The notes: generated from the sequence alone by a model not told the origin. A stretch of DNA of 64,000 nt from IMGVR_UViG_3300036781_000418:186001-250000, one strand, 5' to 3'; positions 6,623-33,629 are shown, counted from the first letter of the stretch. Program-made: numbers and translations.

Positions 6623-6624
6623 TC

Positions 6625-7515: not shown

Positions 7516-7535
7516 GCAACCAACAGCGAGCAACC

Positions 7536-8750
7536 ATGAAAACAGCTTACGTAGTGATCGGCGCCGGCTTCGGCGATGAAGGCAAGGGTTTGATCACCGA
7601 CTACCTCACACGGCGTAGTGGTGGACGAGCGGTTGCTCGCTTCAACGGTGGCGCACAAGCTGGACACACCGTCCAGCTGCCCAACGGGGTGCGCCACGTC
7701 TTTGGACACTACGCGTCTGGCACCTTGGCCAACGCTAACACGATCCTGTCGAACAAGTTCATCGTCAACCCGTTCCTCCTGAAGAAGGAGCACGACGCGC
7801 TGGCGAAGATCACGAAGGGCCGCACCCAAGTCGCCGCGATGGCTGGAGCTCGGGTGACGACCTTCTACGACATGGTCCTCAACCAGCTTAAGGAACGCGC
7901 CCGCGGTAACGACCGCCACGGTTCCTGTGGCTGTGGCATCAACGAGACGGTCACCCGCCACGAAGAGCTTCCGCTTCGCGTCGGTGACCAGGTGTCGGAG
8001 TTCTACGCCGTCCACAAGGCGATGGCCGTCAAGCTCCACAACTACGTTGAGGCGAACAACCTCGACTGGCAAGCACTTGTCCGTGAAAACGGCTCGTTGG
8101 AGCTGGATCCGATCACGCACGCCTGGTCTGCCTACTCGACCATCCAAGACCTGATCGTCAAGGTCTCCGATCGACCAGCCCACCACCTGGTGCCGTCGGT
8201 CTTTGAAGGTGCGCAGGGCCTGATGCTCGACGAACACCTTGGCGCCTTTCCACACGTGACCCGCTCGATGACGGGCCTGCCGCAGGCGGTCGCCGCCGCG
8301 ATGGACATGGGTGTGGATCACCTGATTCCGGTGTACGTCACCCGAGCCTACTCCACGCGCCACGGTGCCGGGTTGTTCAAGTACGAGGACCAGCCGATCT
8401 CCGACGGCTTCGTCTTCGTCGACCCCACCAACGTGGACAACGAGTGGCAAGGCTCGATCCGCAAGGCCCCACTCCGACTTGGTCAACTCCAGCACTTCAT
8501 CGGTTCCGACCTGGTGCGTGGTGAACGGATCGCCGAAGCGTGTGGCGTCACCCTTGGCAAAGCCCAGCTTGCCGTCACGTGCCTTGACCAGCTCGGTCCA
8601 AACGTGAACGTGATCGACATGTTTGGCGAAGTGCTGGACATCAAGACCGAAACCCTCCACAACGTCATCGCGACGGTCTGTGCGTTGGAACCCTTCTTGC
8701 TCAGCTACGGTCCCACCAACCAGGATGTTCGAGTGGCGCCTCGCGTTTAG
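7536..8750 (+). CDS. purA: adenylosuccinate synthetase-like protein (divergent PurA clade)
   Basis: GAGFGDEGKG, RFNGGAQAGHT, FEGAQG, PHVTRS, TRHGAG. Confidence 0.8.
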   Translation: MKTAYVVIGAGFGDEGKGLITDYLTRRSGGRAVARFNGGAQAGHTVQLPNGVRHVFGHYASGTLANANTILSNKFIVNPFLLKKEHDALAKITKGRTQVAAMAGARVTTFYDMVLNQLKERARGNDRHGSCGCGINETVTRHEELPLRVGDQVSEFYAVHKAMAVKLHNYVEANNLDWQALVRENGSLELDPITHAWSAYSTIQDLIVKVSDRPAHHLVPSVFEGAQGLMLDEHLGAFPHVTRSMTGLPQAVAAAMDMGVDHLIPVYVTRAYSTRHGAGLFKYEDQPISDGFVFVDPTNVDNEWQGSIRKAPLRLGQLQHFIGSDLVRGERIAEACGVTLGKAQLAVTCLDQLGPNVNVIDMFGEVLDIKTETLHNVIATVCALEPFLLSYGPTNQDVRVAPRV

Positions 8751-14025: not shown

Positions 14026-14481
14026 ATGCTACCCGCCGTCTGCGTGCTTATCCAGCACCACCAAGACAAGGACTTCTACATCGCCGTCTCGCGTCGCGAC
14101 GACCCCTCCCACTGGGGGCTGCCTGGCGGCAAGGACGACGATGAACACGAGTCGAACATTGAAGCCGCCCAGCGTGAGTGCAACGAGGAGATCGGCATCC
14201 TCGCCGCCCTAACGTCCTTCGAGCCCATGTACGTGGGACTTTGTCCGGGTGACGTGAACTTCTGGGTGACCACCTACGCGTTCATGGACCCTGAGCCGAT
14301 CCACTTCGACGAGCTCGTGGCCGAGAAAGGCCTGGTCGTCGAGTGGAAGTCCGAGCAAGACCTCTGTGATCCGAAGTTGACGCCCTTCGCGGCCTACAAC
14401 GTCGAGGTCTTCAAGTCGCTCCGCAACCGTTGGCCAAGTGGCGTGATTCCAGTTCCTGGTGTCTCCTACTTCAAGGGCTGA
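14026..14481 (+). CDS. Nudix hydrolase
   Basis: WGLPGGK..ESNIEAAQRECNEEIG Nudix box; GAGG RBS before ATG 14026. Confidence 0.85.
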   Translation: MLPAVCVLIQHHQDKDFYIAVSRRDDPSHWGLPGGKDDDEHESNIEAAQRECNEEIGILAALTSFEPMYVGLCPGDVNFWVTTYAFMDPEPIHFDELVAEKGLVVEWKSEQDLCDPKLTPFAAYNVEVFKSLRNRWPSGVIPVPGVSYFKG

Positions 14482-14659
14482 CCATGCGCTGGGTCTACCT
14501 TATCCTGGTGGCGGCGGTGATCATCGCGATCGTCTCAATCACGGGACTCTGCTACTCCTTCGACGACCACAACTACCGCCTGGCCGGCGCGTCGTGCATT
14601 GGGTTGTTCGCGTCGTGGATGGCGATCATCGTCTTCTTTGTCAAGCTAAAGGACTAACC

Positions 14660-15028
14660 ATGCAACGCCTCAAGCTCTTTTTCAAGAAGTGGGGTCTTCG
14701 CGGCCAGCTGCAGACGATCGACGAGCAGGTTGAACGGCTCAAGGATAACTTGATCGAGCTTGAGCGGACGCTCACCTTGCTCCAGGCCGCCGAGACTGGA
14801 ATTGAGCCAGGCCCAGACGCCCCCGCCGCGCTCATGCGCGTGCAGTACCACATTGTTCAGGTGACCGACGCCATGAAGCGCAGCACGAGTCACCTCACTG
14901 AGTTCAAGCGGTTGCAGGCCATGCTTGAAGGGCTGCTGGCCGCCATGGACCTTGATCGCTTAGTCAACCAGAGCAACAGGTTGTCGGGGCCGACGATTGA
15001 TCGTATAATGGCCTCGTCAGATCGCTAA
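14660..15028 (+). CDS. hypothetical coiled-coil protein
   Basis: AAGGA RBS before ATG 14660. Confidence 0.6.
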   Translation: MQRLKLFFKKWGLRGQLQTIDEQVERLKDNLIELERTLTLLQAAETGIEPGPDAPAALMRVQYHIVQVTDAMKRSTSHLTEFKRLQAMLEGLLAAMDLDRLVNQSNRLSGPTIDRIMASSDR

Positions 15029-15057
15029 ATAGTTCCATCAACCCACTGGAGAATACC

Positions 15058-15411
15058 ATGGAATCGTGAGTCACTCAAAAGCACTACCTCTACACCATCT
15101 CCCGCCGCGACCTCCCACTCGCGCAACAGGCTGTCCAAGCTGCTCACGCGGCGATTGAACACGCCTACCAGTACGGCCGATCTCCCGATCACCACCCGTC
15201 GTACATTCACCTCACCGTTCGAAACCAGCACGAGCTGATCAAGCTCAAGGCGCGCCTGCACCTCAACGAGGTCGACACCGCCGAGTTCCACGAGCCCTAC
15301 CTTGATTGGGGACTCACGGCCATCTCTTGCCTCGTCACCGAACAACAACGTCACCTCACTAAAGGGCTCCAACTCTGGCGCCTTCCCACTCAGGAGAATC
15401 ACCATGAATGA
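15058..15411 (+). CDS. Pth2-like peptidyl-tRNA hydrolase with in-frame TGA at codon 4 (putative readthrough); absent from the ORF track
   Basis: GGAGA RBS; MES*VTQKHYLYTISRRDLPLAQQAVQAAHAAIEH...EFHEPYLDWGLTAIS..KGLQLW; RxDL..Q..HA and TA motifs of the PTH2 fold; stop overlaps the next start. Confidence 0.8.
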
Positions 15412-15901
15412 AGAACAGAAAGCCAAGCTTGAGCATCATCTTCCGATCCGCATGATCGTGCGCCTGCAAGATGGCAAGGTCCAAGGTCTGACGGAGGAAT
15501 CGTTCAGCATGAACTGGAGCGACAGCCGTGTGAACGTGTTCTGGTCGGGCAAGGCGTACAGCATGCTTGGTGAACATCAGCTGAATGGCGTGAAGTCTGC
15601 TGAACATAACAGTAAGCCTAACGATCCAAATGAGTTGATCATTGATCCTCTGGCTGAAGATTCACCGATTGAAGTAGACTGGGATAAGTGGCTCTCCGCT
15701 ACCAACAAGTACGACAAGCGAAACGCACCCTTCGTAGTGAAGTCACATGGCACTTGGCAGCTTCGCGCTATTTCAGCCGAAAGACAGGTTGCCAAACACA
15801 AGACCTTGGCGGAACAGTACCAGGCATACTACCAAGAAGAGGCTGACAAAGTCAACAAGATCAACGCAATACTAAACCCGCCAGAGGAGACCGAAGAATG
15901 A
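15404..15901 (+). CDS. hypothetical protein
   Basis: AGGAG RBS before ATG 15404 (MNEEQK). Confidence 0.7.
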   Translation: MNEEQKAKLEHHLPIRMIVRLQDGKVQGLTEESFSMNWSDSRVNVFWSGKAYSMLGEHQLNGVKSAEHNSKPNDPNELIIDPLAEDSPIEVDWDKWLSATNKYDKRNAPFVVKSHGTWQLRAISAERQVAKHKTLAEQYQAYYQEEADKVNKINAILNPPEETEE

Positions 15902-16702: not shown

Positions 16703-17290
16703 ATGACATGGTCGTGAGTCACTCTACCGACCAGCTTTGAAGAGCTGAAGACCGCCATGCAGGCCGGATACCAGACCACGGGTCTGAGCTTCTGGGACCA
16801 TGGGGTGATGGTGAAGGGTTACTTCGAGGACCTGATGGGCCAGCGCACGCTGACCTGGCGGCTGCCTCAGTGGTACCTCACCCATGAGGATAAGATCAAG
16901 GACGCGCTCCGTCCAAGGATGGACCAGCTGACCACGTATCAGCTCTGGCATGACCTTGGCAAGCCGTACTGTCGCACCGTCGACGAGCAAGGTAAAGTAC
17001 ATTACCCTGACCACGCCGACGTCTCAAGTCACATCTGGCGCAAGCTTGGTGGAGATCCATTGATCGCCGACTTGATTGAACGGGACATGCTGTGTCACCA
17101 GCTTCGTCCAGCGGAGGCCCATGAGTTCGCCTCCAACCCCAACGCACTCGCACTGCTGATCACCGCCCTCTGCGAGCTGCACGCCAACGCCTCAATGTTT
17201 GGTGGCTTGGAATCCGAGTCCTTCAAGATCAAGTGGAAGCGACTCGACAAGTGCGGTAACATCATCCTCAACAGTATCTTCAAGGAGTAA
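16703..17290 (+). CDS. HD-domain phosphohydrolase with in-frame TGA at codon 5 (putative readthrough)
   Basis: AAGGA RBS; MTWS*VTLPTSFEELKTAMQAG.. is in frame with the 16757 ORF; DHG...LWHDLGKP..HYPDHA..DMLCH HD motifs. Confidence 0.75.
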
Positions 17291-17295
17291 TCCAA

Positions 17296-17550
17296 ATGAA
17301 CTTCAATTCCCGTGAAACCTACCTCGTCGCCGTAGCTCAGTGGAAGGCCGAATACGCCGCCCACAGCCTGGCTATCCGCCAGCTCAAGCATGACCGCAGC
17401 AACCTGCAACGCGAGGGGAAGGACGTCTACCGTACGTTGGTCGCCATCACCGTCGCGAAGAACCAAGCGACCGAGATGATCAACGAGCGCCTTGCCAGTA
17501 AGGAGGCGGCTCAAGCTCAGTACGAAGAAGCGCGAGTGAAGGCCGCTTAA
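17296..17550 (+). CDS. hypothetical protein
   Basis: AAGGAG RBS; 84 aa. Confidence 0.7.
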   Translation: MNFNSRETYLVAVAQWKAEYAAHSLAIRQLKHDRSNLQREGKDVYRTLVAITVAKNQATEMINERLASKEAAQAQYEEARVKAA

Positions 17551-18077
17551 CTTCGTTTATCGGCGCTGACCATGAAGCTCAGGATCGGTCGTTGGGCTGG
17601 CCCTGAGCTTCCAGCTGGTGCCACTTTTTCACGCCAACCATGCTCAAGCTGCTTGTCAAGCTCGGCCTTCGTGGCGGCGGCCATGTCAATCTTAAACAGA
17701 CCGCCAACCAGCTGGTGCGACCACTTGTTGAACAAGTTAGCTGGAGGTACGAACACGTAGCGCCCAGCGGCGACTAGTGATTCAAGGTACTCATTGATCG
17801 CCTTCTTAGCTCCCTTGAAGCGCAACTCAGCTGGAAGATAGTCTTGTGGGTTGTCATGCTCGTTACCCCAGCCTGCAATGCTGGTCAACTCACAGTCAAA
17901 CATGATGCACTCCCAGAACTCACCATCACCAAGTAGCGAACGTTCGCTCCCGTTGGTGGATGAGCGCTTCAGGTCATAGCGCTCAAGCAGGCGGTGGAGT
18001 GCGATTGATACTTCCTGCCTAACGTAAGGGAGCTGATCGGCTCCACGCTTCTGCATGTGAATTTCGCGTAGCTTCAT
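17547..18077 (-). CDS. hypothetical protein, last gene of the AAA/vWA operon
   Basis: TAATG-coupled to the vWA gene; ADQLPY motif resembles the paralog family at 22729-25806. Confidence 0.65.
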   Translation of the reverse strand: MKLREIHMQKRGADQLPYVRQEVSIALHRLLERYDLKRSSTNGSERSLLGDGEFWECIMFDCELTSIAGWGNEHDNPQDYLPAELRFKGAKKAINEYLESLVAAGRYVFVPPANLFNKWSHQLVGGLFKIDMAAATKAELDKQLEHGWREKVAPAGSSGPAQRPILSFMVSADKRS

Positions 18078-19867
18078 TAGAAGTGGCTGATGAGGGCGCC
18101 GCCCATACCGAGTTGACGAACGATAGAGTCGTAGGTGCCCACACCGTCGAAGATCGCGCCGAACTGCGATGGGTGCCCCTTGATCAGCTTCTTCAGCGTG
18201 GCGAAGTTTGCGCCTTCGGCCATGTCTGAGTCTGACATGACGATGACGTTGTACTTCTTACGGAGCAGAATTTCCAACTGGCCCGCCAAGTCATCGGTGA
18301 AGTTGGTCGCGCCACCTTGGTGCTCCTTGAACACGTGGTCCAAGCTGAACGAGGTACCGCCACCGCCTTCGTCGGCCTCAGAGGCCGACTTCAGCTTGAT
18401 GGCTGAGCCACCTGAGCCAGAGACTGTGCAGCGGTAGAACGTGTAATCGTCGGAGAACTCGCAGACGATGAACGTCTTGGCGACGCTCGACTGCTTTGAC
18501 GCCTCACGTGCGTTGGCCAACACCTTGTCGATGTGGGTGCCCATGGAACCAGACGAGTCGATGACGAGGCAGAGCTTGACCTTCTGGGCTGGCACGACGA
18601 CCTCACCTGGCTTGACGGCCGCGGCGCCAGTCTTCTGAACCATGTCGATCGAGGTGATGTTGCGACGGTGGACCTTCTGGTAGGTCGTCTCCGTCGTGTC
18701 GGACGAGCGCATCAGGCGGTCCAGCAGCGCGCGCCAGTTGTAGCGTGGCTTGACGGCCTGAACTTCACGGCGTGCGCCGGAGTTGTTACCTTGGCCACCC
18801 TTACTGGCGGTGTTCGTCTTTGGATCGGGCCCGTCTTGGGCACCGTCTTCGTGTTCACCCGCCGCCTTGCTGGTCTTCTTGGAGTGGTTCTCCATGTCGC
18901 TTTCAGACGGGGCTTCACCGGTGCGCGGATCCTCTTGGTTGTCCGAGTCGATGTGATCGTCCGTCAGGTCACCCAGCTGCTGCTCAACCTGCTTCTGTTG
19001 TGGCTTCGTCAGCTTGTCGAACTCAGACTTAACAAGCTCGTACATCTCACGGTAGGTGAGCTGGCGGTCGTAGTTGATCAGGTCGTTGAACAACCCCATC
19101 GGCAGCGGTTGGTGTCCAGCCTTCGTCAGGTCGTAGTTGGAGCGGAAGTCACCAGTCCAGTTGTGGATCAGTGGCGAGCCGCCCATCACCTTCATGTGGT
19201 GGAAGTCGCCGTGCGTGTAGTGGTAGAACTCGTGCAGAATCAGGAACTCAAGGGTCGAGTATTCGTTTGGAAACTCACCACCGTTGGCCTCGTACTTCTT
19301 GGACTTCGGCTTGATCTTTTGGGCGTGCGCGAAGTTCAGCAGGGTCTGCATGAACGGCACGTTGAAGATGAACTCGCCGTTGCCCGTCGCGGCCGCCGTG
19401 TCGACGTCCTTGAACTGCTTGTTGTCCTTCTCATCGTCGCCTGGAATCAAGATGATACGTGGCGAGATGATTGGCTTCTTGTTGTAGTAGTTCCGAAGCG
19501 GGAAGATCGAGCGGTTCTCGGCCTTCACACGACGGACGAGCTTGGAGAACAGCACTGGTGAGAACTGTGGACCGCTGTTGTCGGCGTGCTGGCCTTCTTT
19601 GCGAGCGTCCGAATAGCGCTTGAACAGCTCCTGCTCAATGATGTTCTTTTGGATTGAGTGGTACAGGATCGGCGCCTTCGTCGCGATCGAGCTGAACTTC
19701 GCCGCCTTCGCGTCGATCTCGTCCTTGATCACCGACTCCTTTTTGCCCTCAAGCTGGGCGAGGTACGAGAGCGCCGCCTTGATGCGCGCGTCGGCCCAGG
19801 TCGACTGCGGGGAGACCGTGTCGACCTTGGCCTTGATGTTGTTGATCATCTCGGCTTCATTGATCAC
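18077..19867 (-). CDS. metallopeptidase-vWA fusion (DUF2201-like), MoxR partner
   Basis: ILHEFYH (HExxH); acidic/Gly linker; LVIDSSGSM MIDAS; GGATNF; VMSDSD. Confidence 0.85.
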   Translation of the reverse strand: MINEAEMINNIKAKVDTVSPQSTWADARIKAALSYLAQLEGKKESVIKDEIDAKAAKFSSIATKAPILYHSIQKNIIEQELFKRYSDARKEGQHADNSGPQFSPVLFSKLVRRVKAENRSIFPLRNYYNKKPIISPRIILIPGDDEKDNKQFKDVDTAAATGNGEFIFNVPFMQTLLNFAHAQKIKPKSKKYEANGGEFPNEYSTLEFLILHEFYHYTHGDFHHMKVMGGSPLIHNWTGDFRSNYDLTKAGHQPLPMGLFNDLINYDRQLTYREMYELVKSEFDKLTKPQQKQVEQQLGDLTDDHIDSDNQEDPRTGEAPSESDMENHSKKTSKAAGEHEDGAQDGPDPKTNTASKGGQGNNSGARREVQAVKPRYNWRALLDRLMRSSDTTETTYQKVHRRNITSIDMVQKTGAAAVKPGEVVVPAQKVKLCLVIDSSGSMGTHIDKVLANAREASKQSSVAKTFIVCEFSDDYTFYRCTVSGSGGSAIKLKSASEADEGGGGTSFSLDHVFKEHQGGATNFTDDLAGQLEILLRKKYNVIVMSDSDMAEGANFATLKKLIKGHPSQFGAIFDGVGTYDSIVRQLGMGGALISHF

Positions 19868-22419
19868 TTGAACAGCTCCGTCACGTACTTGCGCATCTTG
19901 CCGTTGAAGTCAACGACGTCGGTGATGATGTCGGCGTCGGCTGACGCCAGGTGGATGACCACCTCACGGAGCGCGGCCTTCGCGGCGTCGACCATCTTGT
20001 TGGAGACGTCGTGCGCCTTCATCGCGTGCACGACTTCACGCATGATGTATTCTAGCTTAGCGATCTCTTCGTCTTGAACCTTGATGGCCAGGGTCTTCTT
20101 GTCCATGTTCTTCGTCTTACCGAAGGCTTGGAAGGCGTTCTTCGCGTCGTTCTTGACGGCGTCCATCAGGAACTCGCTGAGCTCTTCCTTGAACTGGACG
20201 GAGTCGACGGACGTGATGTAGTTCACGAACTCGAGGTCGTTCAGCAGGTGCTTGGAGTGGTCGTCAAACGGACGTTGGAGCAGGCTCTTGAGGTCCTTCA
20301 GCGAGTCGACCTTGCGCTTGAACAGCTCACCAAGGGTGAAGTCGTCCGTCGACATGATCCAGTCGTTGATGCTTTCGATCGACTCAGGGGAGTCGACGCC
20401 GTGCTTGTGCTTGATCACGTACTCAAGGGTGTGCTGCACGGCGCGGGAGATGGCGGTGCGGATAGCCGCTTCGCTCTCAGTCACGTCGTGTTCTGGGTCC
20501 TCAAGCTTCTTGGACTCACGCTTGTACGTGCGGTCGACCGACTTCGCCATGTTCGTCAGCATGTCCGTGTACTCACGAGCGGAGACGTATAGGCCGGTGT
20601 CGGCGATGTTCAAGACGAAGTGCGGGTCGGCGCCGTTGACCTTACCACTGCGGGTGCGGAAGCGGTCCACCAACGCGTAGAGGACGTTGTGCGAGATCTG
20701 TGAAGCCTCTGGTGAGACCTTCAGGTCGACTGTACTCAAGTGCTTCTTGAACTTGTCCCACGACACGCCGACTGGAATCACGTCCATGACGTCGCGCACG
20801 TGCTTGGTCAGCTCCTGCGTACCCTTACCAGTTGGGTTGACGGCGGCCACGACGACGGAGTCGTCCGGCAGCTTGTACTCAGGCGTGAACTCCTTCTCCA
20901 ACAGAACCTTACGGATCGCGTTGAAGACCTTCACGTTGGTGCGGTTCATTTCGTCGAAGAAGATCAGGTAGTGAACGTCTTGGCCCTTCCAAGCGGCGAA
21001 GCGGGCGTCGCCCTTCTCCTTGCCGAAGAACTTGACGAGACGTTCCTTGAGGTTTGCCTCACCGGTCTTCATCTGCTTCTGGATGTCGTCCCAGAGCGGC
21101 GGCTTGGAGAACGAAACCTGCAGGCCGTCCTTACCACGCTTGGAGAGCGGCACGCCGATGACTTCTTCCGCGGAGAGGTTCTGCACGTCGATGAAGACTG
21201 GAACGAGGTTCAAGTCGGTCGCGAGGTCGGTGATGTGCTTCGTCTTACCCGCACCTGGCAGGCCGCCGATGACTGGGATGTACTTGCGGGCGTTGCCCAG
21301 CTTCATCTTCGTCTCGATCTGGTGCTTCAGCGTCGAGCGCCAGTCGGCGTCGTCCACGTTGTCTGGGTTACCCTCGAAGCCGTGGTCTTCCTTGATCAGC
21401 TCGTTGACGGCCTTGATGACCGCTTCGGAGATCGCGGCCTTGTCGCCGGTCTTGTAGTTCTGGAAGTTGATCTGCACGTTCTTCAACAGTGCGTCCGCGT
21501 CTTCCTTGGACTTCAGTGGGAAGGCGGAGTTGATGTAGATCAGGAGCTGTTCCCAACGGCGTGGCGAGACGCGCACGTCCGCGTTGATGTCGTCGTGGGA
21601 GAGGATGCCCTTGTGCTCTTCCTTCGTCATCAAGTCGTAGAACTTCTGGAGCAGCTTCTCGTTCAGCTGAACCTTCTTGTTGTTCTTGTACTTGTTGATG
21701 ATGTAGGCGAACCACTCGTCCGTGCTTGGGGTGTCGAAGTTCAGCATGCGGAAGTCCTCGTTTTCGAGGATGTCGCCCACACCGGAGTCGACCAAGTTCG
21801 ACGCGAAGATCACGTAGAGGTCGTCTGGGAGTGGGTTGGAACCGATGCGACCGTTCAGGATCGAACGCAGCATGTTGCGGATCGAGCTGGACGTCTGACG
21901 GAAGTACTCGTCCAGGAACAGGATGGCGCGGTACTTCGAGCGGATGTCCTTGATCTCGTCTGGAATGGCCTTGTCGGAACCGCCAAGCTCTTCCCAAATT
22001 TGCTTCAAGTCACCACGGGCCATGACGGCCTTGATCACGCCGGAGTCGGTGGCCTTCGAGGCCTCCTTGACTTCGGAGTACAGGGCCGACTTAGCCAGCT
22101 CGATGTCGTACTCTGAGCCACCCTTCGTGTCGATGTGCAGGTGCTCGGTCTTTGAGGCGCCGCTCGGCTTGACCACGATGAACGGGATGTCGATGATGTG
22201 CTCTTCGACGATGTGCGGGGTTTCAATGATGATCAGCTCAAGGCCGAGCAGCGTGGCCATGTCCTTGACGAACGAGGTCTTACCAACCCCGGTGTCGCCA
22301 CCGAGCAGGTAGCCGGCCTGGCTTAGGCCGTCATGCTTGGCGTGCATGTTGTCAAAGATGTGCTCAAGGGTCTCGACTTTGCCGCTAATGTCGAGGTTTG
22401 CAACGTCTAGTTTCTTCAT
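19864..22419 (-). CDS. MoxR-like AAA+ ATPase with two tandem AAA modules
   Basis: Module 1 GDTGVGKT / LFLDEYFR / FASN; module 2 GLPGAGKT / IFFDEMNR / AAVNP. Confidence 0.88.
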   Translation of the reverse strand: MKKLDVANLDISGKVETLEHIFDNMHAKHDGLSQAGYLLGGDTGVGKTSFVKDMATLLGLELIIIETPHIVEEHIIDIPFIVVKPSGASKTEHLHIDTKGGSEYDIELAKSALYSEVKEASKATDSGVIKAVMARGDLKQIWEELGGSDKAIPDEIKDIRSKYRAILFLDEYFRQTSSSIRNMLRSILNGRIGSNPLPDDLYVIFASNLVDSGVGDILENEDFRMLNFDTPSTDEWFAYIINKYKNNKKVQLNEKLLQKFYDLMTKEEHKGILSHDDINADVRVSPRRWEQLLIYINSAFPLKSKEDADALLKNVQINFQNYKTGDKAAISEAVIKAVNELIKEDHGFEGNPDNVDDADWRSTLKHQIETKMKLGNARKYIPVIGGLPGAGKTKHITDLATDLNLVPVFIDVQNLSAEEVIGVPLSKRGKDGLQVSFSKPPLWDDIQKQMKTGEANLKERLVKFFGKEKGDARFAAWKGQDVHYLIFFDEMNRTNVKVFNAIRKVLLEKEFTPEYKLPDDSVVVAAVNPTGKGTQELTKHVRDVMDVIPVGVSWDKFKKHLSTVDLKVSPEASQISHNVLYALVDRFRTRSGKVNGADPHFVLNIADTGLYVSAREYTDMLTNMAKSVDRTYKRESKKLEDPEHDVTESEAAIRTAISRAVQHTLEYVIKHKHGVDSPESIESINDWIMSTDDFTLGELFKRKVDSLKDLKSLLQRPFDDHSKHLLNDLEFVNYITSVDSVQFKEELSEFLMDAVKNDAKNAFQAFGKTKNMDKKTLAIKVQDEEIAKLEYIMREVVHAMKAHDVSNKMVDAAKAALREVVIHLASADADIITDVVDFNGKMRKYVTELFK

Positions 22420-22422
22420 GGC

Positions 22423-22638
22423 TTAGTCGTAGTTGTGGTACTTCTTGTGGGCGACCGGGTGGGTCTTGGCGAGCTGCTGGTGGGCGAAGGCACGGAGCGC
22501 TTCGAGCTCCTCTTCCTCAGTCTTGAACTTCGGCAGCTTCTTGGCTTCTTCCAGCTTGGCGGCCTCGTCTACCTTGACGGTTGGGACGGAGAGCTCGACG
22601 GGCGGCTTGTTCTCTCCTTGGTAGCGAAATAGCTTCAT
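22423..22638 (-). CDS. small hypothetical protein
   Basis: AGGA RBS; first gene after the minus-strand TAAATA. Confidence 0.65.
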   Translation of the reverse strand: MKLFRYQGENKPPVELSVPTVKVDEAAKLEEAKKLPKFKTEEEELEALRAFAHQQLAKTHPVAHKKYHNYD

Positions 22639-22666
22639 TGTTGGGTTCCTGGTAAGGCGATAGGGC

Positions 22667-22702
22667 TATTTACGTCGACATGGCAACACAGCAGCCTAAA
22701 TA
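22667..22702. promoter_or_regulatory. divergent pair of TAAATA late-type promoters
   Basis: TATTTA at 22667-22672 (-) and TAAATA at 22697-22702 (+); the motif recurs upstream of many genes in this GC-rich genome. Confidence 0.65.
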
Positions 22703-22728
22703 TGAAATCTATTGAACTCGTCCTTAAA

Positions 22729-23202
22729 ATGATCCTTCAGCAGCTTTTCGAAGCCGACATGTACAGCGAGGTTGGACCACGGTCTACCGCGTACAAGGAG
22801 TTGGCCAACCGATTCGACCTGACCATGTCGTCCGGTAAGGGGCTCCCAGCAGTCGGCAAATCCAGCGTTCGGTTCGCCTACGGCCTGAAGCCAAAGGGCG
22901 GTGACACTGGCGAGACGAAAGCCGGCGAGGACCGCCTACCGTACAAGCTCCGGCTCAAAGGGTTCCTGAACGAGCTTGTCAAGCTCCTGAAGGACGAGCT
23001 GGCTGAAGGTCGAGGGGTTGACATCCTGTTCGGTGGTGCCGCCAAGGCTAAGCACCCAGTCGACGCTGACACGATCAAGGACATCGTCCACCAGGCCACG
23101 ATGAACGCGATAGTGCCAGGTGGTGCCTACTCGTCGTCCGCCCCACTCGCCTACGCCGACTGTATCGGTTGGGTCATCAACTTTCCAGAGGACGCTAAGT
23201 GA
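22729..23202 (+). CDS. paralog family member 1 (putative virion/internal protein)
   Basis: MILQQLFE start; EDRLPYKLRLKGFL and IGWVI motifs. Confidence 0.65.
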   Translation: MILQQLFEADMYSEVGPRSTAYKELANRFDLTMSSGKGLPAVGKSSVRFAYGLKPKGGDTGETKAGEDRLPYKLRLKGFLNELVKLLKDELAEGRGVDILFGGAAKAKHPVDADTIKDIVHQATMNAIVPGGAYSSSAPLAYADCIGWVINFPEDAK

Positions 23203-24080
23203 AGCTCGACCTACTCTTTGAATCCGCCGCTCAGGTTCGACCGTTCGCGAACGAGATGTACGCCAAGTTCCGAGCCATCGCCAAGAAGTACGACCTGGTC
23301 TTCGACATCCCGCTCGGCTGGCCGCAGATCAGCAGCAAGCAGGTCGGCTTCGGCGGCACCCTCAAGCTGATCAGGGGTAAAGCGGACGCTGAACAGCTGC
23401 CGTTGAACATCCTAGTTAAGGGCTGCCTTAAGGAGATCTCCAACGAGCTTGGTCGACTGATGGACGAAGGCCACACCATCCAGGTGTTGCCTGGCCTGCG
23501 CAGCCAAGACCACAACGTCGGTGGCTACAACGCCCCTAAGGGCACGCCCCGGCCGAACCTACGGGTCAGTGTTACGAACAAGGACGAGATCTTCCGTAAG
23601 CTGATGGACGGTGTCGAGTTCAAGCATGCTGGACACAGCATGGCGGCCGGCCCGACGGTCGGCTGGACGGTCTCCGTTCCAACGGACTACATCAAAGAGA
23701 AGGCCAAGCTCTACGTGCTGAGCGCCACGATCTACACTAGAAACGATCGTGCCAAGGCCTACAAGTTTACAGCGCACGCGTTCGTGCCACTGACTGACAA
23801 GTCAACGCTTGAAGAGATCGGCAAGTTCGGAAACATCGGTTACCACGCCACCACCGACAAGCAGTCACCCGAGCTGGTGCAAAAGCTGTTCACCTTCACC
23901 AAGCAACTTTACGGTGGGTCACCGAAGGTTGACAAGCTGACCTTGGCCGACATCAACTGGTTTGGCGTAAGCTACACCGGTAGCAAGAAGCAGTACCGAC
24001 GCGACTCCAACGAACTATCACTTGCCGAGTTCAAGAAGCTGGCAAAGTTTATCCATGACAACGCAGTGCAAGTACCATGA
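23199..24080 (+). CDS. paralog family member 2
   Basis: MKLDLLFE; AEQLPLNILVKGCL; VGWTV. Confidence 0.7.
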   Translation: MKLDLLFESAAQVRPFANEMYAKFRAIAKKYDLVFDIPLGWPQISSKQVGFGGTLKLIRGKADAEQLPLNILVKGCLKEISNELGRLMDEGHTIQVLPGLRSQDHNVGGYNAPKGTPRPNLRVSVTNKDEIFRKLMDGVEFKHAGHSMAAGPTVGWTVSVPTDYIKEKAKLYVLSATIYTRNDRAKAYKFTAHAFVPLTDKSTLEEIGKFGNIGYHATTDKQSPELVQKLFTFTKQLYGGSPKVDKLTLADINWFGVSYTGSKKQYRRDSNELSLAEFKKLAKFIHDNAVQVP

Positions 24081-24964
24081 AGATTGAACAACTACTCACC
24101 GAACAAGTCGACCACGCGTTGGCCAAGCAACTGACCGCCCAGGTGCGTGAAATGGCGGCCAAGATGGAGTTTGTCATCAGCACCGACAGCGGTTGGCCAG
24201 CGGTAAACCGAAACGAAGTGCTCATTGGCTTTTCCCTCTATGAAAAGGGCGGCCAGTCGGCTAACCTAGACGATCGCCTGCCGTACGCAATCAGAGTCAA
24301 GGGCTTTCTCAGGTTGATGGAGCCGTTGCTCGGTAAGCTGCTTGATGAAGGTCGATCGTTGTCCATCCTTGTTAGGTCTGAAAAGACGAAGCGCATTCCA
24401 GTGTCGAGTAAGGCGGACCTACGCAAGGCGCTTGAAGAAGGCGTCAAGTCGCCGTCCAGTGGCAGCTTTGCAAAGATTGGCTGGGCCGTTGGTGACACGC
24501 CTGAAGGCATTGCTGCGGCCGACGCGGGTGGCCGCACGAAGATCGCACGGGTTGACATCACAATCGGCGAGCTGTCAGGCAAAATCGAATTGATTGGTTC
24601 AGCCAAAACGCCGTCACCTGAACGTGTGTGGAACAGCGTGCAGTTCTTTACGGTGTTGCCTGAAAAAGATCCAATGGTGAAGGCGGTGCGCACCACGCCA
24701 GACACGTCTTCCGTCTACACCATCTTCTACGATCACCAAGGCAAGAAGCCAAACGAAACGATTGCCCGCAAGCTGAACGTGATAGCCAAGAAGTACGGTG
24801 GTCCAGACTTGATGGCTGACCCTGAAAAGCAGCACAAGATCTTTAACTTTGCAGTCAACACGAAGGTTTCACCAAAGGGCCCACGCACCGCGGTCGAGCT
24901 GACGCCTGAGCAGTTGAAGGCCCTGCTTGCCGACCTGTTGAAGCTGAAGAACGAGTACTTCTAA
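24077..24964 (+). CDS. paralog family member 3
   Basis: MKIEQLLTE; DDRLPYAIRVKGFL; IGWAV. Confidence 0.7.
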   Translation: MKIEQLLTEQVDHALAKQLTAQVREMAAKMEFVISTDSGWPAVNRNEVLIGFSLYEKGGQSANLDDRLPYAIRVKGFLRLMEPLLGKLLDEGRSLSILVRSEKTKRIPVSSKADLRKALEEGVKSPSSGSFAKIGWAVGDTPEGIAAADAGGRTKIARVDITIGELSGKIELIGSAKTPSPERVWNSVQFFTVLPEKDPMVKAVRTTPDTSSVYTIFYDHQGKKPNETIARKLNVIAKKYGGPDLMADPEKQHKIFNFAVNTKVSPKGPRTAVELTPEQLKALLADLLKLKNEYF

Positions 24965-25806
24965 TGAAACTAGAAACCCTGCTTGAGACAGCCGACGAAC
25001 GCGAGGCCATCGAGATCCACAAGAAGTTCAAAGAAGTCGCCAAGGGACTTGAAGTTAGGCAGGTCAACGGCCAGGCTGGCCCACACATGACGACCAAGGG
25101 CGCGTGGTACGGTGGCGGCTTCACGCCTGAAGGCGGCCAAACCGCCGAACGCAAGGCGGGTGACGATCGTATTCCGTTCGACCTGCGCGTGCGTGGGTAC
25201 TTGAAGCATGTTGCCAGCGTTCTTGAGCAGCACGTCAAGGCCGGTGACGTCGTCAAGATCGCCAAGGGGCCGAACCGCAACAACGTGACCGATGTCAAGG
25301 CGGGCGACGACGTCTTCAAGCTCCTTCAGCAGAACGTGATCAAGACGTCCTCGTCCATGTGGGACAATGCAATGGACTCCGTGATGTGGTTCATCGGTCA
25401 ACCGGACGACGGCACCCGGTTGGTTCACATGTACGTCTCCGTCTCGCTTCGATACGACACGGCCGCTGGAGCCGTCGGTGATCGTCACAAGGGCATGAAC
25501 TACAGTGCGTCGGTCGACAACGCGGAATACCTAGCACTGCAGCGGAAGTTCAACTCGCTTGCCAAGAAGGCGACGGGTAAGACCTACCTCTACGTCAGTC
25601 AACGAAACGAGTTGCAGGCCAAGCTCATCAAGGCACTGCCACAGCTGATCGACGATAAGGCCAAGCTGTCCTTTATAGCCAAGCACCATGATGACATCGA
25701 TCTGGTGTCCATGGAGCTCAAGCAACATCCATACGAGAAGATCACGAAGCTGTCATCGGAAAAGTTCATGGAGAAGCTCAAGCTTGTCGTTGACCTCCTG
25801 ACCTGA
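24964..25806 (+). CDS. paralog family member 4
   Basis: MKLETLLE; DDRIPFDLRVRGYL; VMWFI. Confidence 0.7.
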   Translation: MKLETLLETADEREAIEIHKKFKEVAKGLEVRQVNGQAGPHMTTKGAWYGGGFTPEGGQTAERKAGDDRIPFDLRVRGYLKHVASVLEQHVKAGDVVKIAKGPNRNNVTDVKAGDDVFKLLQQNVIKTSSSMWDNAMDSVMWFIGQPDDGTRLVHMYVSVSLRYDTAAGAVGDRHKGMNYSASVDNAEYLALQRKFNSLAKKATGKTYLYVSQRNELQAKLIKALPQLIDDKAKLSFIAKHHDDIDLVSMELKQHPYEKITKLSSEKFMEKLKLVVDLLT

Positions 25807-25873
25807 GAAACGTGTTAGAGGGCGCACGCTTCGCGATACAATGTGCACATGCCCTTAGATTAAAAGGGCACTA

Positions 25874-26170
25874 ATGTCTGAACGAATTTGGTACAAGGCT
25901 CGTCTGAAAGAGGCGGCCAGCAACATCTACACCGAGAGCTTCTACCCCGAGGCGAAGAAGCGGACTGGAACCCGATGGGTCTGGTTCACGCAGGAGGACG
26001 TCACCTCCCAAAACCAACGGGTCCTTGTCACTTCCGGCATGAGTCGCAACAAGTTCAGGATGATGACCCTTGAACTGGCGTTGGCCTTCCTTGAACCAGC
26101 GTGCAAGGCGACGAAGGCCGAGACGACCATGTTGAACGACCTGAGCTCACACCTCGAACGAAACATCTGA
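25874..26170 (+). CDS. hypothetical protein
   Basis: TACAAT -10-like box upstream; coupled to the next gene. Confidence 0.6.
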   Translation: MSERIWYKARLKEAASNIYTESFYPEAKKRTGTRWVWFTQEDVTSQNQRVLVTSGMSRNKFRMMTLELALAFLEPACKATKAETTMLNDLSSHLERNI

Positions 26171-26670
26171 TGCCGACCACCCACCTCTACATCGATTTGG
26201 AGGATACGATCATCGCCCCAGTCGCGGAGGGGTGGACGAACGTGCACCTGGTAAACTCAGAGAAGGTGAAGGCCTTCATTCAAGAGCTGAAGCCGGACCA
26301 CGTTCACATCTTCTCGTTCGCGATCCACTCAGACCATGACCGCATGCTGTTCAACATGTGGGTGCGTGAGCGGTTGGAGCGGGCACTTGGTGTCACGTTC
26401 GGCTTCGTTCCAACGACGGACGAGATCACGGAGATGACATGTCGAGGAAAGGGAATCAGCCCCCAGTACACGACCTTCAACGACCTGTGCGACTTCTTCG
26501 GCAAGGCTGAGGCGTTCCGTCAGGTGATGCGACACCAGTGGAAGGGCGTGGTCAACCATCCCAACACCTCGGTCAACGTCATCTTGCTGGACGACGACGT
26601 GATCAACGAGTCGTTCACCTGGCCTGATCTCAAAATTGAGGGACGTACGATCAACGTCAACAAACTATGA
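26170..26670 (+). CDS. HAD-superfamily-like protein
   Basis: LYIDLEDTII motif I; VILLDDD motif IV. Confidence 0.6.
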   Translation: MPTTHLYIDLEDTIIAPVAEGWTNVHLVNSEKVKAFIQELKPDHVHIFSFAIHSDHDRMLFNMWVRERLERALGVTFGFVPTTDEITEMTCRGKGISPQYTTFNDLCDFFGKAEAFRQVMRHQWKGVVNHPNTSVNVILLDDDVINESFTWPDLKIEGRTINVNKL

Positions 26671-28319: not shown

Positions 28320-28736
28320 ATGAAGCTCAACATCCTACTGGAAGACGACATGTCACATGAGGACATCATGGACGTGCTTGAACTCATCAAGAAGAAGTTT
28401 GAGCGGACGTACGAGGTTGAGATAGACAAGGAAGTCCCACGGCTGATCTTCTACATCGCCTCAACGAAGGACTTTCCGTTTGATGATGACGATCGCGTTG
28501 GTGAGGACTTTGCGGTCAAGGTTGGTCGCGTTGCCGGCAACTGGGCGATCATGTCAAAGGTTCCAAACGGTACGACCCCACAAAGCCGGGGTCGTACGAA
28601 CATCATTGAGGTTGATGAGGACGGCAAGATCATTCCACAGCTTGAACAGATTCTGCCGAAGTTGGTCAAGGACCTGAAGCGGCTGGAAGCCGACAACCAT
28701 TGGAAGATTGAATGGTGCGACAACCATGAAGCTTGA
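28320..28736 (+). CDS. hypothetical protein with MKLNILLE N-terminus
   Basis: Shared N-terminal motif. Confidence 0.65.
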   Translation: MKLNILLEDDMSHEDIMDVLELIKKKFERTYEVEIDKEVPRLIFYIASTKDFPFDDDDRVGEDFAVKVGRVAGNWAIMSKVPNGTTPQSRGRTNIIEVDEDGKIIPQLEQILPKLVKDLKRLEADNHWKIEWCDNHEA

Positions 28737-28763: not shown

Positions 28764-29183
28764 ATGAAACTCAACCACCTACTTGAAACCGAGATGGACG
28801 CCGAAGAGTACGACCTTGCGTTGATGCTCATGAAGAAGCAGTTCGATAAAATTCCAGGCGTGAAGGTGATCACGTACCCAGCTAAAAACTCTGGAGTAAG
28901 TCATATTACGCTGAGGTTGGGCGAGGTTAGACGTGTTGGCACCGATGAAATTTCCGACTGTGACATCACAGTTTGGAACCGATTCAAGGATAAGGATAAT
29001 GGCTGGCAAGTCAAGGGTATCTTTTACACCAAAAAAGGTCAAGTGAACCCAGAGCTGATTCATCGAACCACACATGACGACAGCGCCGTTATCAAGGTAG
29101 TGCACTCGGTTATAGATCAGATCAAGGACAATCTTACTACTCTTGAAAATGCCGGTAAGATCGTATGGACGCGCGTCAAGTGA
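28764..29183 (+). CDS. hypothetical protein with MKLNHLLE N-terminus
   Basis: Shared N-terminal motif; more AT-rich than its neighbours. Confidence 0.65.
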   Translation: MKLNHLLETEMDAEEYDLALMLMKKQFDKIPGVKVITYPAKNSGVSHITLRLGEVRRVGTDEISDCDITVWNRFKDKDNGWQVKGIFYTKKGQVNPELIHRTTHDDSAVIKVVHSVIDQIKDNLTTLENAGKIVWTRVK

Positions 29184-33299: not shown

Positions 33300-33629
33300 A
33301 TGAAGGTTGCACAGTTGTTCGAAGAGCTGAAAGCCTACACAGGTGGTCGGCTTTCAAAGACTCTCGAGAATGCAATGTTGGAGTTCTGCGATGCGTTTGA
33401 CATCGACAGCTTCTCGGTCTCAACTGAGAAGTTTCATCAGCCGCATCCAACTAAAGGTTGGAGCGATACGGTAAACGTGAAGAACTTCTTCATCAACATG
33501 GGGACTGAAAAGAACGCGACGCTGTTGAAACGGTACTTGAAGGACAAGGGCTTTGGAGTCGAAGATCGATACCGCCCTGAACATGTCGTCAATACTTGGA
33601 ACGTTCCAAAGAAGTTCAAGTCAAAGTAA
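33300..33629 (+). CDS. hypothetical protein with MKVAQLFEE N-terminus
   Basis: TAAATA at 33272; GGAG RBS. Confidence 0.7.
   Translation: MKVAQLFEELKAYTGGRLSKTLENAMLEFCDAFDIDSFSVSTEKFHQPHPTKGWSDTVNVKNFFINMGTEKNATLLKRYLKDKGFGVEDRYRPEHVVNTWNVPKKFKSK

What the first reader, a model, noticed from the sequence alone, without database searches (positions are those of the whole stretch)
17547..25806. Double-AAA MoxR plus HExxH-vWA operon divergently paired with four paralogous variable proteins
Seen: back-to-back TAAATA boxes precede the 851-aa two-module ATPase and peptidase-vWA on one side, and on the other four genes sharing D(R/Q)LP(Y/F)xxR(V/L)KG(F/Y)L..(I/V)xW in the N-terminal half with unrelated C-terminal halves. 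Known: MoxR-vWA pairs act as chaperones or remodelers and usually have one AAA module. Inference: a late-expressed, possibly virion-packaged remodeling or protease machine with interchangeable adaptors or clients.
Basis: partly seen in the sequence, partly recalled or inferred. Interest (0 to 1): 0.65.

Follow-up and report, generated by a model that had tools for sequence, protein, structure and literature searches.

The report
Jumbo-phage MoxR–vWA operon plus leader-tagged paralogs
In a 343-kb T4-like jumbo phage, a widely conserved chaperone-like operon (small protein, double AAA+ ATPase, metalloprotease-vWA protein) lies back-to-back with five fast-evolving paralogs whose first nine residues resemble the T4 signal that sends proteins into the capsid. 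The paralogs therefore look more like packaged cargo than dedicated adaptors of the ATPase.

Summary
On the minus strand lie a 71-aa gene, an 851-aa ATPase made of two homologous MoxR-type AAA+ modules, and a 596-aa HExxH (DUF2201_N) peptidase-vWA protein. Two TAAATA boxes sit in the 63-bp divergent gap.

On the plus strand, four genes share a ~150-aa N-domain (BLAST E 1e-15 to 1e-7).

The MoxR plus peptidase-vWA pair of group 2.2 jumbo phages is already described (Iyer et al. 2021). The double-AAA form is a large unnamed metagenomic family of at least 311 clusters. Its RsoM2USA orthologue was assigned to a band from purified virions.

The paralogs adjoin the ATPase only in the three closest genomes, out of roughly 28 distinct ATPase loci examined. 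Elsewhere they form tandem arrays with no ATPase in the sequence available.

New here: 63 of 64 family members begin MK(L/I)x(E/D/Q)L(L/F)xE, similar to the T4 capsid-targeting sequence MKTYQEFIAE. About 40 genes of this genome carry the same leader, and the genome encodes a gp21-type prohead protease.

Best reading: the paralogs are capsid-targeted internal proteins placed next to a virion-assembly chaperone operon. An adaptor or client relationship is not shown.

The parts
22667..22672 (-). TAAATA box, with 28 nt between it and the ATG of the 71-aa gene. Candidate promoter (-10-like element) of the ATPase operon.
22697..22702 (+). TAAATA box, with 26 nt between it and ATG 22729. Candidate promoter of the paralog operon.
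22423..22638 (-). 71-aa protein, first gene of the ATPase operon. A small gene occupies this position in nearly all related loci. Its C-terminus is conserved (NPxLYxKI-like, often ending aromatic-Asp).
19864..22419 (-). 851-aa ATPase with two tandem homologous MoxR-type AAA+ modules (about residues 1-350 and 351-620) and a helical C-terminal region. Walker A, Walker B and sensor-1 residues of both modules are invariant in 30 homologues.
18077..19867 (-). 596-aa protein: DUF2201_N HExxH metallopeptidase domain, an acidic low-complexity linker, and a C-terminal vWA domain with a complete MIDAS. Its GTG start overlaps the ATPase stop codon by 4 nt.
17547..18077 (-). Fifth paralog (176 aa, N-domain only). 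Its start overlaps the vWA stop codon by 1 nt. L014 and L015 have the same arrangement.
22729..23202 (+). Paralog 1 (157 aa from the revised start, N-domain only). Leader MILQQLFEA.
23199..24080 (+). Paralog 2 (293 aa): N-domain plus a unique C-half. Leader (V/M)KLDLLFES. pI 9.5.
24077..24964 (+). Paralog 3 (295 aa): N-domain plus C-half. Leader MKIEQLLTE. It has a full-length orthologue in L014 (36% identity). The AlphaFold2 model has mean pLDDT 85.
24964..25806 (+). Paralog 4 (280 aa): N-domain plus a unique C-half. Leader MKLETLLET.

Best explanation
Two different things lie back-to-back and are probably transcribed from the same class of TAAATA promoter.

(1) A conserved three-gene operon. 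It encodes a small ~70-aa protein, a tandem-duplicated MoxR-type AAA+ ATPase with both nucleotide sites intact, and an HExxH-metallopeptidase-vWA protein with an intact MIDAS. This is the double-AAA form of the MoxR/peptidase-vWA chaperone-cochaperone pair already described in group 2.2 (T4-like-head) jumbo phages. That pair was proposed to act in virion assembly and in proteolytic processing of structural proteins. Inferred mechanism: the vWA/MIDAS domain holds a client, the ATPase remodels it, and the peptidase cuts it. The ATPase may itself stay with the particle.

(2) A lineage-specific, fast-diversifying family of five basic proteins. Each has a nine-residue leader MK(L/I)x(E/D/Q)L(L/F)xE, a conserved ~140-aa alpha/beta N-domain, and in three of the five a hypervariable C-half. 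By analogy with the T4 capsid-targeting sequence (MKTYQEFIAE, cut by prohead protease gp21 after Glu), these are most likely capsid-targeted internal or ejected proteins. They form one of about a dozen leader-bearing gene clusters (~40 genes) in this genome.

What is shown: gene content, domain homology, residue conservation, the distribution of the leader, and the synteny pattern.

What is inferred: packaging, cleavage, timing of expression, and any contact between the paralogs and the ATPase machine.
For: Operon identity and conservation:
- Pfam and PHROG assignments.
- The catalytic motifs of both AAA modules are invariant in 30 homologues and present in at least 90% of 56.
- HExxH and MIDAS residues are invariant in 52 homologues.
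- A small gene, the ATPase and the vWA gene are contiguous in the related loci examined. A P0002 homologue follows the ATPase in 20 of the 22 IMG/VR loci.
- At least 311 ATPase clusters and 147 vWA clusters exist, many on contigs of 100-360 kb.
- Iyer et al. 2021 describe the pair and name Atu_ph07 ASV44729.1 and ASV44728.2 as examples. Those are the proteins my searches reached.
- RsoM2USA ORF86 was assigned to a band from purified virions. Its calculated mass confirms that it is the ATPase orthologue.

Leader and packaging hypothesis:
- 63 of 64 family members have (L/I)xE within residues 3-12.
- In the AlphaFold2 model the first 10 residues have pLDDT 52, while most of the N-domain scores 89 or more. 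This fits a linear signal rather than part of the fold.
- Conservation is at the peptide level. Leu6 is encoded by five different codons.
- A weight matrix built only from non-window family members finds 42 N-termini in the genome above the 99.9th percentile of internal starts, where about 4 are expected. These belong to unrelated families.
- The family is basic, with median pI 9.26.
- The genome encodes T4-type MCP, portal and Peptidase_S77 prohead protease.
- The T4 CTS sequence and its properties are taken from the literature.
- RsoM2USA ORF89 starts MKTFKQFLSE and was assigned to a virion band.
- The family occurs in tandem arrays, is patchily distributed, and has heterogeneous C-halves.
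Against: - There are no proteomic or expression data for this phage or for any member of the paralog family. Cleavage after the leader Glu is unobserved.
- The leader is one to two residues shorter than the T4 CTS, and the resemblance is by eye plus a pattern. It could be another kind of N-terminal signal, or a conserved first helix.
- T4 internal proteins are small. These proteins have a conserved folded domain of unknown role.
- The RsoM2USA virion assignments are band-level ('most likely correspond'), and the ATPase itself has no such leader.
- The paralog downstream of the vWA gene is translationally coupled to it in three genomes. Leader-bearing genes of other families follow the vWA gene in L018/L033 and L028. 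A functional tie to the machine is therefore not excluded.
Confidence: 0.5

Rival explanations
1. The paralogs are interchangeable adaptors or clients that dock through their shared N-domain onto the MoxR-peptidase-vWA machine. The variable C-halves would set specificity.
For: - The divergent pairing with matching TAAATA boxes is conserved in G000, L014 and L015.
- One paralog is translationally coupled to the vWA gene in all three.
- A conserved-N, variable-C architecture is adaptor-like.
- Leader-bearing genes of other families directly follow the vWA gene in L018/L033 and L028, and they flank the operon in RsoM2USA.
Against: - The family is absent from the flanks of about 25 other distinct ATPase loci, including ones 57-59% identical, and from the whole RsoM2USA genome.
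- Family arrays occur with no ATPase or vWA gene in the readable flanks: 14.6 kb of L009, all of the 12.7-, 6.6- and 7.0-kb contigs L010-L012, and 16 kb of gene calls on a 25-kb contig.
- Two distant members lie about 60 kb away in the same genome.
- The density of leader genes near the operon (0.138 per kb) is close to the genome-wide value (0.102 per kb).
- No support came from co-folding, which gave no verdict and so counts neither way.
Confidence: 0.15
2. The paralogs are unpackaged cytoplasmic accessory proteins (host takeover or anti-defence). They diversify in an arms race and sit in a hyperplastic region that happens to adjoin the ATPase operon. The MKLxxLLxE start would be only a conserved N-terminal helix or an expression-related feature.
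For: - The family occurs in tandem arrays, has a patchy lineage-specific distribution and has no known domain.
- Other genes preceded by TAAATA in the window are enzymes, not structural proteins.
Against: - The same leader heads about 40 proteins of unrelated families, conserved at the peptide level and not the nucleotide level.
- It is predicted to be detached from the fold.
- It resembles a proven packaging signal, in a genome that has the matching protease.
- A leader-bearing protein of a sister phage was assigned to a virion band.
Confidence: 0.25
3. The paralogs are divergent ATP-grasp-like enzymes (ligases).
For: ATP-grasp enzymes recur among the weak structural hits: Foldseek against PDB with best E 0.017, and the ESM Atlas shape search with TM 0.31-0.35 over 130-145 residues.
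Against: - A second-look alignment gives only Z 3-4 over about 66-76 residues for ATP-grasp chains.
- The best Z values (5-6) go to generic ferredoxin-like alpha/beta sandwiches.
- No conserved acidic or catalytic residues are present.
- None of the 64 members has an ATP-grasp Pfam hit.
- N-domain-only members exist.
Confidence: 0.03

Closest known systems
MoxR AAA+ / metallopeptidase-vWA pair of group 2.2 jumbo phages (Atu_ph07 ASV44729.1 + ASV44728.2; Iyer et al. 2021, PMC7824862)
   Same: - The ATPase is immediately followed by a DUF2201_N HExxH peptidase fused to a vWA domain.
- The second AAA module plus tail aligns to the Atu_ph07 ATPase (26% by tblastn, E 1e-6; 23% by BLASTP, E 3e-10).
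- Both belong to phrog_1297 and phrog_1314.
- Both occur in phages with a T4-type head.
   Different: - Here the ATPase has an extra, homologous and catalytically intact N-terminal AAA module (851 aa against 417 aa).
- The vWA protein is about 170 aa longer, with an acidic linker.
- A conserved small gene precedes the operon.
- The vWA domain does not reach the PF09967 model.
Ralstonia phage RsoM2USA ORF87-86-85 (PMC8504454)
   Same: - An orthologous trio: the ATPase is 41% identical over 96% of its length, and the vWA protein 42%.
- Homologues of ORF91 and ORF92 are also neighbours in the window.
- ORF86 was assigned to a band from purified virions.
   Different: - The operon lies in the opposite orientation relative to the ORF91/92 homologues.
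- It is flanked by LRR-like paralogs (ORF88-90, 81-82) of a different family.
- The family studied here is absent from the whole genome.
T4 internal proteins IPI/IPII/IPIII and their capsid-targeting sequence
   Same: - A short N-terminal leader begins MK and ends (L/I)xE.
- The proteins are basic.
- They are non-conserved and diversifying, and encoded in variable clusters.
- The genome encodes a gp21-type protease, a Gp23 capsid protein and a gp20 portal.
   Different: - The leader is 8-9 residues rather than 10, with a different consensus.
- The proteins are larger and share a folded 140-aa domain.
- About 40 genes carry the leader, against a handful in T4.
- Packaging and cleavage have not been demonstrated.
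Cellular MoxR-vWA pairs (RavA-ViaA, CbbQ-CbbO, CobS-CobT) and Rea1/midasin. This comparison is from my own knowledge and was not tested here.
   Same: An AAA+ ATPase of the MoxR/dynein-related clade works with a MIDAS-containing vWA partner. Midasin likewise strings several AAA modules in one chain.
   Different: Those cellular pairs have a single AAA module per chain and no HExxH peptidase on the vWA partner. Midasin has six modules with the MIDAS domain on the same polypeptide.

Membership tests
MoxR-type AAA+ ATPase (Pfam AAA_3 / AAA_5 clade) | Pfam AAA, AAA_3 or AAA_5 match above the curated cut-off | tested here: met
   AAA 31.2 bits (cut-off 21.2), AAA_3 30.9 (27), AAA_5 31.0 (22). JGI names homologues 'MoxR-like ATPase'.
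MoxR-type AAA+ ATPase (Pfam AAA_3 / AAA_5 clade) | Walker A GxxGxGK(T/S), Walker B hhhhDE and sensor-1 Asn are present and conserved | tested here: met
   Both modules have them: G44-V-G-K47-T48, D170-E171 and N208 in the first; G389-x-G391-K392-T393, D489-E490 and N528 in the second. All are invariant in 30 homologues.
MoxR-type AAA+ ATPase (Pfam AAA_3 / AAA_5 clade) | Gene adjacent to a vWA/MIDAS partner | tested here: met
   The vWA gene overlaps the ATPase stop codon. A P0002 homologue lies directly downstream of the ATPase in 20 of 22 IMG/VR loci. L039 has it upstream and L029 shows none. It also follows the ATPase in L005 and L014-L018.
MoxR-type AAA+ ATPase (Pfam AAA_3 / AAA_5 clade) | Ring oligomer with ATP-dependent remodelling activity | not testable with these tools
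   Needs biochemistry or cryo-EM.
DUF2201-type metallopeptidase-vWA protein | DUF2201_N domain with an HExxH zinc motif | tested here: met
   PF13203 scores 30.8 bits against a cut-off of 23.2. H212, E213 and H216 are invariant in 52 homologues.
DUF2201-type metallopeptidase-vWA protein | C-terminal vWA domain with MIDAS (DxSxS...T...D) | tested here: met
   D437, S439, S441, T521, D546 and D548 are invariant. At the Pfam level only a weak VWA_4 hit was found (17.2 bits, below 27), and PF09967 gave no hit.
Jumbo-phage group 2.2 MoxR/peptidase-vWA system (Iyer et al. 2021) | Homology to the named exemplars, in a phage with T4-type head genes | tested here: met
   Module 2 matches ASV44729.1. 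The exemplar vWA protein carries DUF2201_N plus DUF2201. Gp23, T4 portal and Peptidase_S77 are present in G000.
Jumbo-phage group 2.2 MoxR/peptidase-vWA system (Iyer et al. 2021) | One AAA module per ATPase chain, as in the exemplar | tested here: not met
   Two homologous modules are present. It is therefore filed as a variant, not an identical member.
T4-type CTS-bearing internal head proteins | N-terminal leader of about 10 residues ending in (L/I)xE | tested here: met
   Present in 63 of 64 family members. Consensus MKLxQL(L/F)E. The T4 CTS is MKTYQEFIAE.
T4-type CTS-bearing internal head proteins | A gp21-type prohead protease is encoded by the same phage | tested here: met
   Peptidase_S77 at G000 129812-130219, E 5e-26, above the cut-off.
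T4-type CTS-bearing internal head proteins | Basic, poorly conserved mature proteins encoded in variable clusters | tested here: met
   Median pI is 9.26. No isolate-phage homologue was found. Copy number varies between G000, L014 and L015, and the C-halves fall into many BLAST clusters.
T4-type CTS-bearing internal head proteins | Presence in the capsid, with the leader removed by the protease | not testable with these tools
   Only indirect evidence exists: the leader-bearing RsoM2USA ORF89 was assigned to a virion band.
ATP-grasp superfamily | Significant structural or sequence match, and conserved nucleotide- or Mg-binding residues | tested here: not met
   Z is only 3-4 over about 70 residues. 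There are no Pfam hits in 64 members and no conserved acidic residues.

The most novel reading that the evidence does not exclude
A T4-like capsid-targeting leader marks about 40 proteins (roughly 9% of the genes) of this jumbo phage lineage. The phage would then load a very large, rapidly diversifying set of proteins into its head for ejection into the host. The virion-associated double-AAA MoxR / metalloprotease / vWA machine, whose vWA gene is often directly followed by a leader-bearing gene, would be the device that loads, unfolds or trims this cargo.
Probability: 0.15. Interest if true: 0.8.

Novelty: new variant of a known kind. Interest (0 to 1): 0.5.

Why it matters
The function of the MoxR/peptidase-vWA pair in jumbo phages has been predicted but never tested. 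This work shows three things about it:
- A double-AAA form with two intact ATP sites is a large, conserved family.
- It always travels with a small third gene.
- Its orthologue has published band-level evidence of being in virions.

More usefully, the leader gives a simple sequence rule for listing candidate packaged or ejected proteins in T4-like-head jumbo phages. Very little is known about what such large capsids carry besides DNA. If the rule holds, it marks dozens of fast-evolving proteins as likely first-contact effectors against host defences. It would also offer a packaging tag for this phage group, as the CTS does for T4.

Tried and rejected
- **Co-folding.** The vWA protein (52-row alignment) was folded with the coupled paralog P0003 (39 rows). 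The score was 0.00 against a mark of 0.32, giving no verdict. It is not evidence either way.
- **Fold identification of paralog P0006.**
  - The second model, from 64 sequences, had pLDDT 85.2.
  - Foldseek against PDB and BFVD gave nothing at E <= 0.001.
  - VIA-align wide search gave a best Z of 6.3, to PilO and other generic ferredoxin-like sandwiches.
  - The Atlas shape search gave TM <= 0.35.
  - The Atlas feature search gave no usable hit.
  - The recurring ATP-grasp hits were rejected after a second look (Z 3-4).
- **Sequence annotation of the paralogs.**
  - Pfam, PHROGs and NCBIfam found nothing.
  - The word search found only self hits.
  - tblastn against 50,697 phage records found nothing.
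- **Solved-structure search.** PDB sequence searches with the ATPase and the vWA protein found nothing useful.
- **C-halves.** An HMM built from 47 non-window C-halves hits none of the three window C-halves. hhalign of N-domain against C-domain gave probability 5%, so the C-half is not a detectable duplicate of the N-domain.
- **Locus retrieval with the family.** The search for related loci with the family alignments failed because no stretch was conserved enough. Logan and NCBI contigs could not be searched whole, so absence of an ATPase next to the arrays holds only for the readable flanks.
- **Promoter and terminator scan.** The sigma-70 and intrinsic-terminator scan of 17000-26600 found nothing above shuffles.
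- **C-terminal Asp of the small protein.** I considered it as a universal MIDAS or HbYX-like ligand. It holds only in the nearer clade, so it is not claimed.
- **Enrichment of leader genes near the operon.** The densities are 0.138 per kb near the operon and 0.102 per kb genome-wide, which is not convincing.

Full report
**Source and setting**

The window is bases 186001-250000 of a 342,591-bp IMG/VR virus record with direct terminal repeats, estimated complete. G+C is about 57%. The genome encodes a T4-type major capsid protein (Gp23, E 2e-86), a T4-type portal (E 2e-77) and a gp21-type prohead protease (Peptidase_S77, E 5e-26) at 128-133 kb. It is therefore a jumbo phage with a T4-like head. 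The only related isolate in the phage collection is Ralstonia phage RsoM2USA.

**Check of the observation**

- Minus strand: a 71-aa gene (22423-22638), the 851-aa ATPase (19864-22419), the 596-aa HExxH-vWA protein (18077-19867) and a 176-aa gene (17547-18077).
  - Only 3 nt separate the 71-aa gene from the ATPase gene. The next two junctions overlap by 4 nt and 1 nt. This is one tightly coupled operon.
- Plus strand: four genes (22702 or 22729-23202, 23199-24080, 24077-24964, 24964-25806). Their junctions overlap by 4, 4 and 1 nt.
- The 63-bp divergent gap holds TAAATA on each strand.
  - The hexamer occurs 21 times in the window against 3.15 expected, and no shuffle out of 100 reaches that count.
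  - It occurs 111 times in the genome. It is mostly flanked by G/C and lies 25-45 nt before a start codon.
- The four plus-strand proteins share about 150 N-terminal residues (BLASTP E 1e-15 to 1e-7).
- Their C-halves show no significant similarity to one another.

Three corrections follow.
- The 176-aa gene downstream of the vWA gene is a fifth member of the family (E 3e-5 with the four-sequence HMM, 5.6e-22 with a 64-sequence HMM).
- The first plus-strand gene almost certainly starts at ATG 22729. The ATG at 22702 overlaps the TAAATA box, and only the 22729 start aligns with the other paralogs.
- The ATPase operon has a third conserved gene, the 71-aa one.

**The ATPase operon**

- The ATPase has two AAA modules. 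They align with each other colinearly (E 2e-7), and each hits phrog_1297 on its own. This is a tandem duplication.
- Walker A, Walker B and sensor-1 residues of both modules are invariant in 30 homologues of 37-68% identity, and are present in at least 90% of 56. Both sites are probably active.
- The second module plus the C-terminal tail corresponds to the single-module ATPase of Agrobacterium phage Atu_ph07.
- The partner protein carries DUF2201_N above the Pfam cut-off.
- Its HExxH motif and a complete MIDAS (DxSxS, T, D) are invariant in 52 homologues.
- The word search found at least 311 clusters of full-length double-AAA ATPases of about 850 aa, and at least 147 clusters of the partner. 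Many lie on contigs of 100-360 kb.
- A vWA-protein gene follows the ATPase gene in 20 of the 22 IMG/VR loci and in every other related locus read (L005, L014-L018). A small gene with a conserved C-terminal NPxLYxKI-like motif precedes it in most of them.

**What is already known about the operon**

- Iyer et al. 2021 (PMC7824862, section 3.4.5) reported a previously unrecognised MoxR AAA+ / vWA pair in group 2.2 jumbo phages. In it the vWA protein is fused to an N-terminal metallopeptidase.
- They proposed a role in virion assembly and in peptidolytic processing of structural proteins, by analogy with the MoxR-vWA system needed for tail development of Acidianus two-tailed virus.
- Their exemplars, ASV44729.1 and ASV44728.2, are the Atu_ph07 genes my searches reached.
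- The RsoM2USA paper (PMC8504454) assigns one of ten bands from purified virions to ORF86 (96.44 kDa). I confirmed that this is the ATPase orthologue, with a calculated mass of 96.43 kDa.
- The pair itself is therefore known. New here are the double-AAA form, its breadth in metagenomes, and the third gene.

**The paralog family**

- No Pfam, PHROG or NCBIfam model matches it.
- The word search found only self hits, and no isolate phage has a homologue.
- The exhaustive profile search found 59 further representatives at E <= 1e-3. They are either about 150-176 aa (N-domain only) or about 260-326 aa.
- An AlphaFold2 model of P0006 built from 64 sequences is confident (pLDDT 85.2).
- The model matches nothing specific. 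The N-domain is a generic ferredoxin-like alpha/beta sandwich (best Z 6.3). The recurring ATP-grasp hits do not survive a second look.

**Linkage test**

- The family flanks the operon in G000 (four divergent paralogs plus one coupled to the vWA gene).
- It does so in L015 as well (ATPase 68% identical; four plus one).
- It also does so in L014 (67% identical; one divergent plus two downstream).
- It is absent from the flanks of L006 (58%), L016 (59%), L017 (57%), L018 (39%), RsoM2USA (41%) and the 22 IMG/VR loci (30-59%). One of those 22 loci, L020, is the L006 contig again.
- It is absent from the whole RsoM2USA genome and from the whole 93-kb L006 contig.
- Conversely, L009, L010, L011 and L012 carry tandem arrays of three to six members with no ATPase or vWA gene in the available flanks.
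- G000 has two distant members about 60 kb away from the operon.
- The pairing is therefore a feature of one narrow sub-clade, not of the system.
- Co-folding of the vWA protein with the coupled paralog gave no verdict.

**A new lead: the leader**

- The most conserved part of the family is its first nine residues, MK(L/I)x(E/D/Q)L(L/F)xE. Of 64 members, 63 have (L/I)xE within residues 3-12.
- In the model these residues have pLDDT 52, while most of the N-domain that follows scores 89 or more.
- The T4 capsid-targeting sequence is MKTYQEFIAE. Its first ten residues suffice to send proteins into the prohead, and gp21 cuts after the Glu.
- T4 internal proteins are basic, poorly conserved and thought to evolve in an arms race with host restriction (PMC8442874, PMC9026906).
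- I built a weight matrix from the 59 non-window members only and scanned G000. It finds 42 N-termini above the 99.9th percentile of internal start positions, where about four are expected.
- These belong to unrelated families, arranged in about a dozen clusters. One is an LRR-like family beside the capsid gene.
- The RsoM2USA homologue of that LRR-like family, ORF89, starts MKTFKQFLSE and was assigned to a virion band.
- Conservation is at the peptide level. Leu6 is encoded by five different codons.
- The family is basic, with median pI 9.26.
- First genes of leader clusters often have TAAATA 24-32 nt upstream. The same box lies 43 nt before the prohead protease gene.
- The T4 late promoter is TATAAATA (my own knowledge). 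A late, head-related expression class is therefore plausible but unproven. Other TAAATA-preceded genes in the window are enzymes.

**Conclusion**

The region juxtaposes two things:
- a conserved, probably virion-assembly MoxR/peptidase-vWA operon, in a double-AAA variant of a known system;
- a lineage-specific cluster of leader-tagged basic proteins, best read as capsid-targeted internal proteins.

Its 'interchangeable adaptors or clients of this machine' inference fails the synteny test.

A looser tie is not excluded. The gene directly after the vWA gene is leader-bearing in three independent lineages: G000/L014/L015, L018/L033 and L028. Overall, though, leader-gene density near the operon is hardly above the genome average.

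Noticed in passing
window 28320-28736, 28764-29183, 33300-33629 (plus strand); genome-wide in G000 at about 11.4-13.7 kb, 75.6-78.5 kb, 87-90 kb, 95-98 kb, 133.9-135.4 kb, 257-258 kb, 269-275 kb, 286 kb and 335-338 kb: About 40 genes of unrelated families start with the same MK(L/I)xxL(L/F/H)E leader as the paralogs (42 N-termini above the 99.9th percentile of internal starts). They are clustered in small operons. None of the three window examples has a Pfam domain.
   Followed up: partly
window-wide (21 sites); G000 129712, 130387, 133861, 135363: TAAATA is about 7-fold over-represented. It is oriented with the genes, usually flanked by G/C, and lies 25-45 nt before starts. There is no conserved -35 region and no TATAAATA anywhere. 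It precedes the prohead protease gene and the LRR-like genes next to the capsid gene, but also enzyme genes.
   Followed up: partly
window 22423-22638 (minus strand), and the equivalent gene in L005, L006, L014-L018, L021-L033, L037: A 60-110-aa gene directly upstream of the ATPase is conserved across the clade. Its N-terminus is variable and its C-terminus is conserved, for example ...HKKYHNYD, ...FKKIVNFD, ...YHKIINWD. It ends in aromatic-Asp in the nearer relatives only. It matches no known family.
   Followed up: partly
L005 (RsoM2USA) 5198-7689 and 14344-15524; G000 83975-84823, 118109-120108, 133864-135356: A second paralog family, LRR-like, has variable N-terminal parts and a conserved C-terminus (ELIDAGYE..AQL). 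It flanks the ATPase operon in RsoM2USA. In G000 it lies beside the capsid gene. One member, ORF89, was assigned to a virion band in the RsoM2USA paper.
   Followed up: partly
L018 12438-15066, L033 14402-17030, L028 14858-15394: In more distant relatives the gene or genes immediately after the vWA gene also carry the leader, but belong to other families. This hints at a recurring position for leader-tagged genes. It is not statistically convincing with the loci in hand.
   Followed up: partly
G000 269493-270554 and 273347-274126 (outside the window): Two distant members of the paralog family (HMM E 6e-8 and 5e-4) lie about 60 kb from the operon, among other leader-bearing genes. In the first, the domain sits in the C-terminal half.
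   Followed up: no
window 3992-5134, 43117-43932, 47588-48475, 53735-54802, 62700-63527: Accessory enzymes preceded by TAAATA: an NMN-adenylyltransferase/NUDIX fusion, a non-specific endonuclease (Endonuclease_NS), a papain-family peptidase C1, and a metallophosphatase. There is also a zinc-ribbon protein whose domain pattern (Zn_ribbon_3, DUF7577) recurs in a protein next to an RNA ligase and family arrays in L009 and L012.
   Followed up: no
L019 12478-14891: In this IMG/VR relative the peptidase-vWA gene is read as two overlapping ORFs (residues 9-279 and 303-596 of the query). This may be a frameshift, a sequencing error or a genuine split.
   Followed up: no
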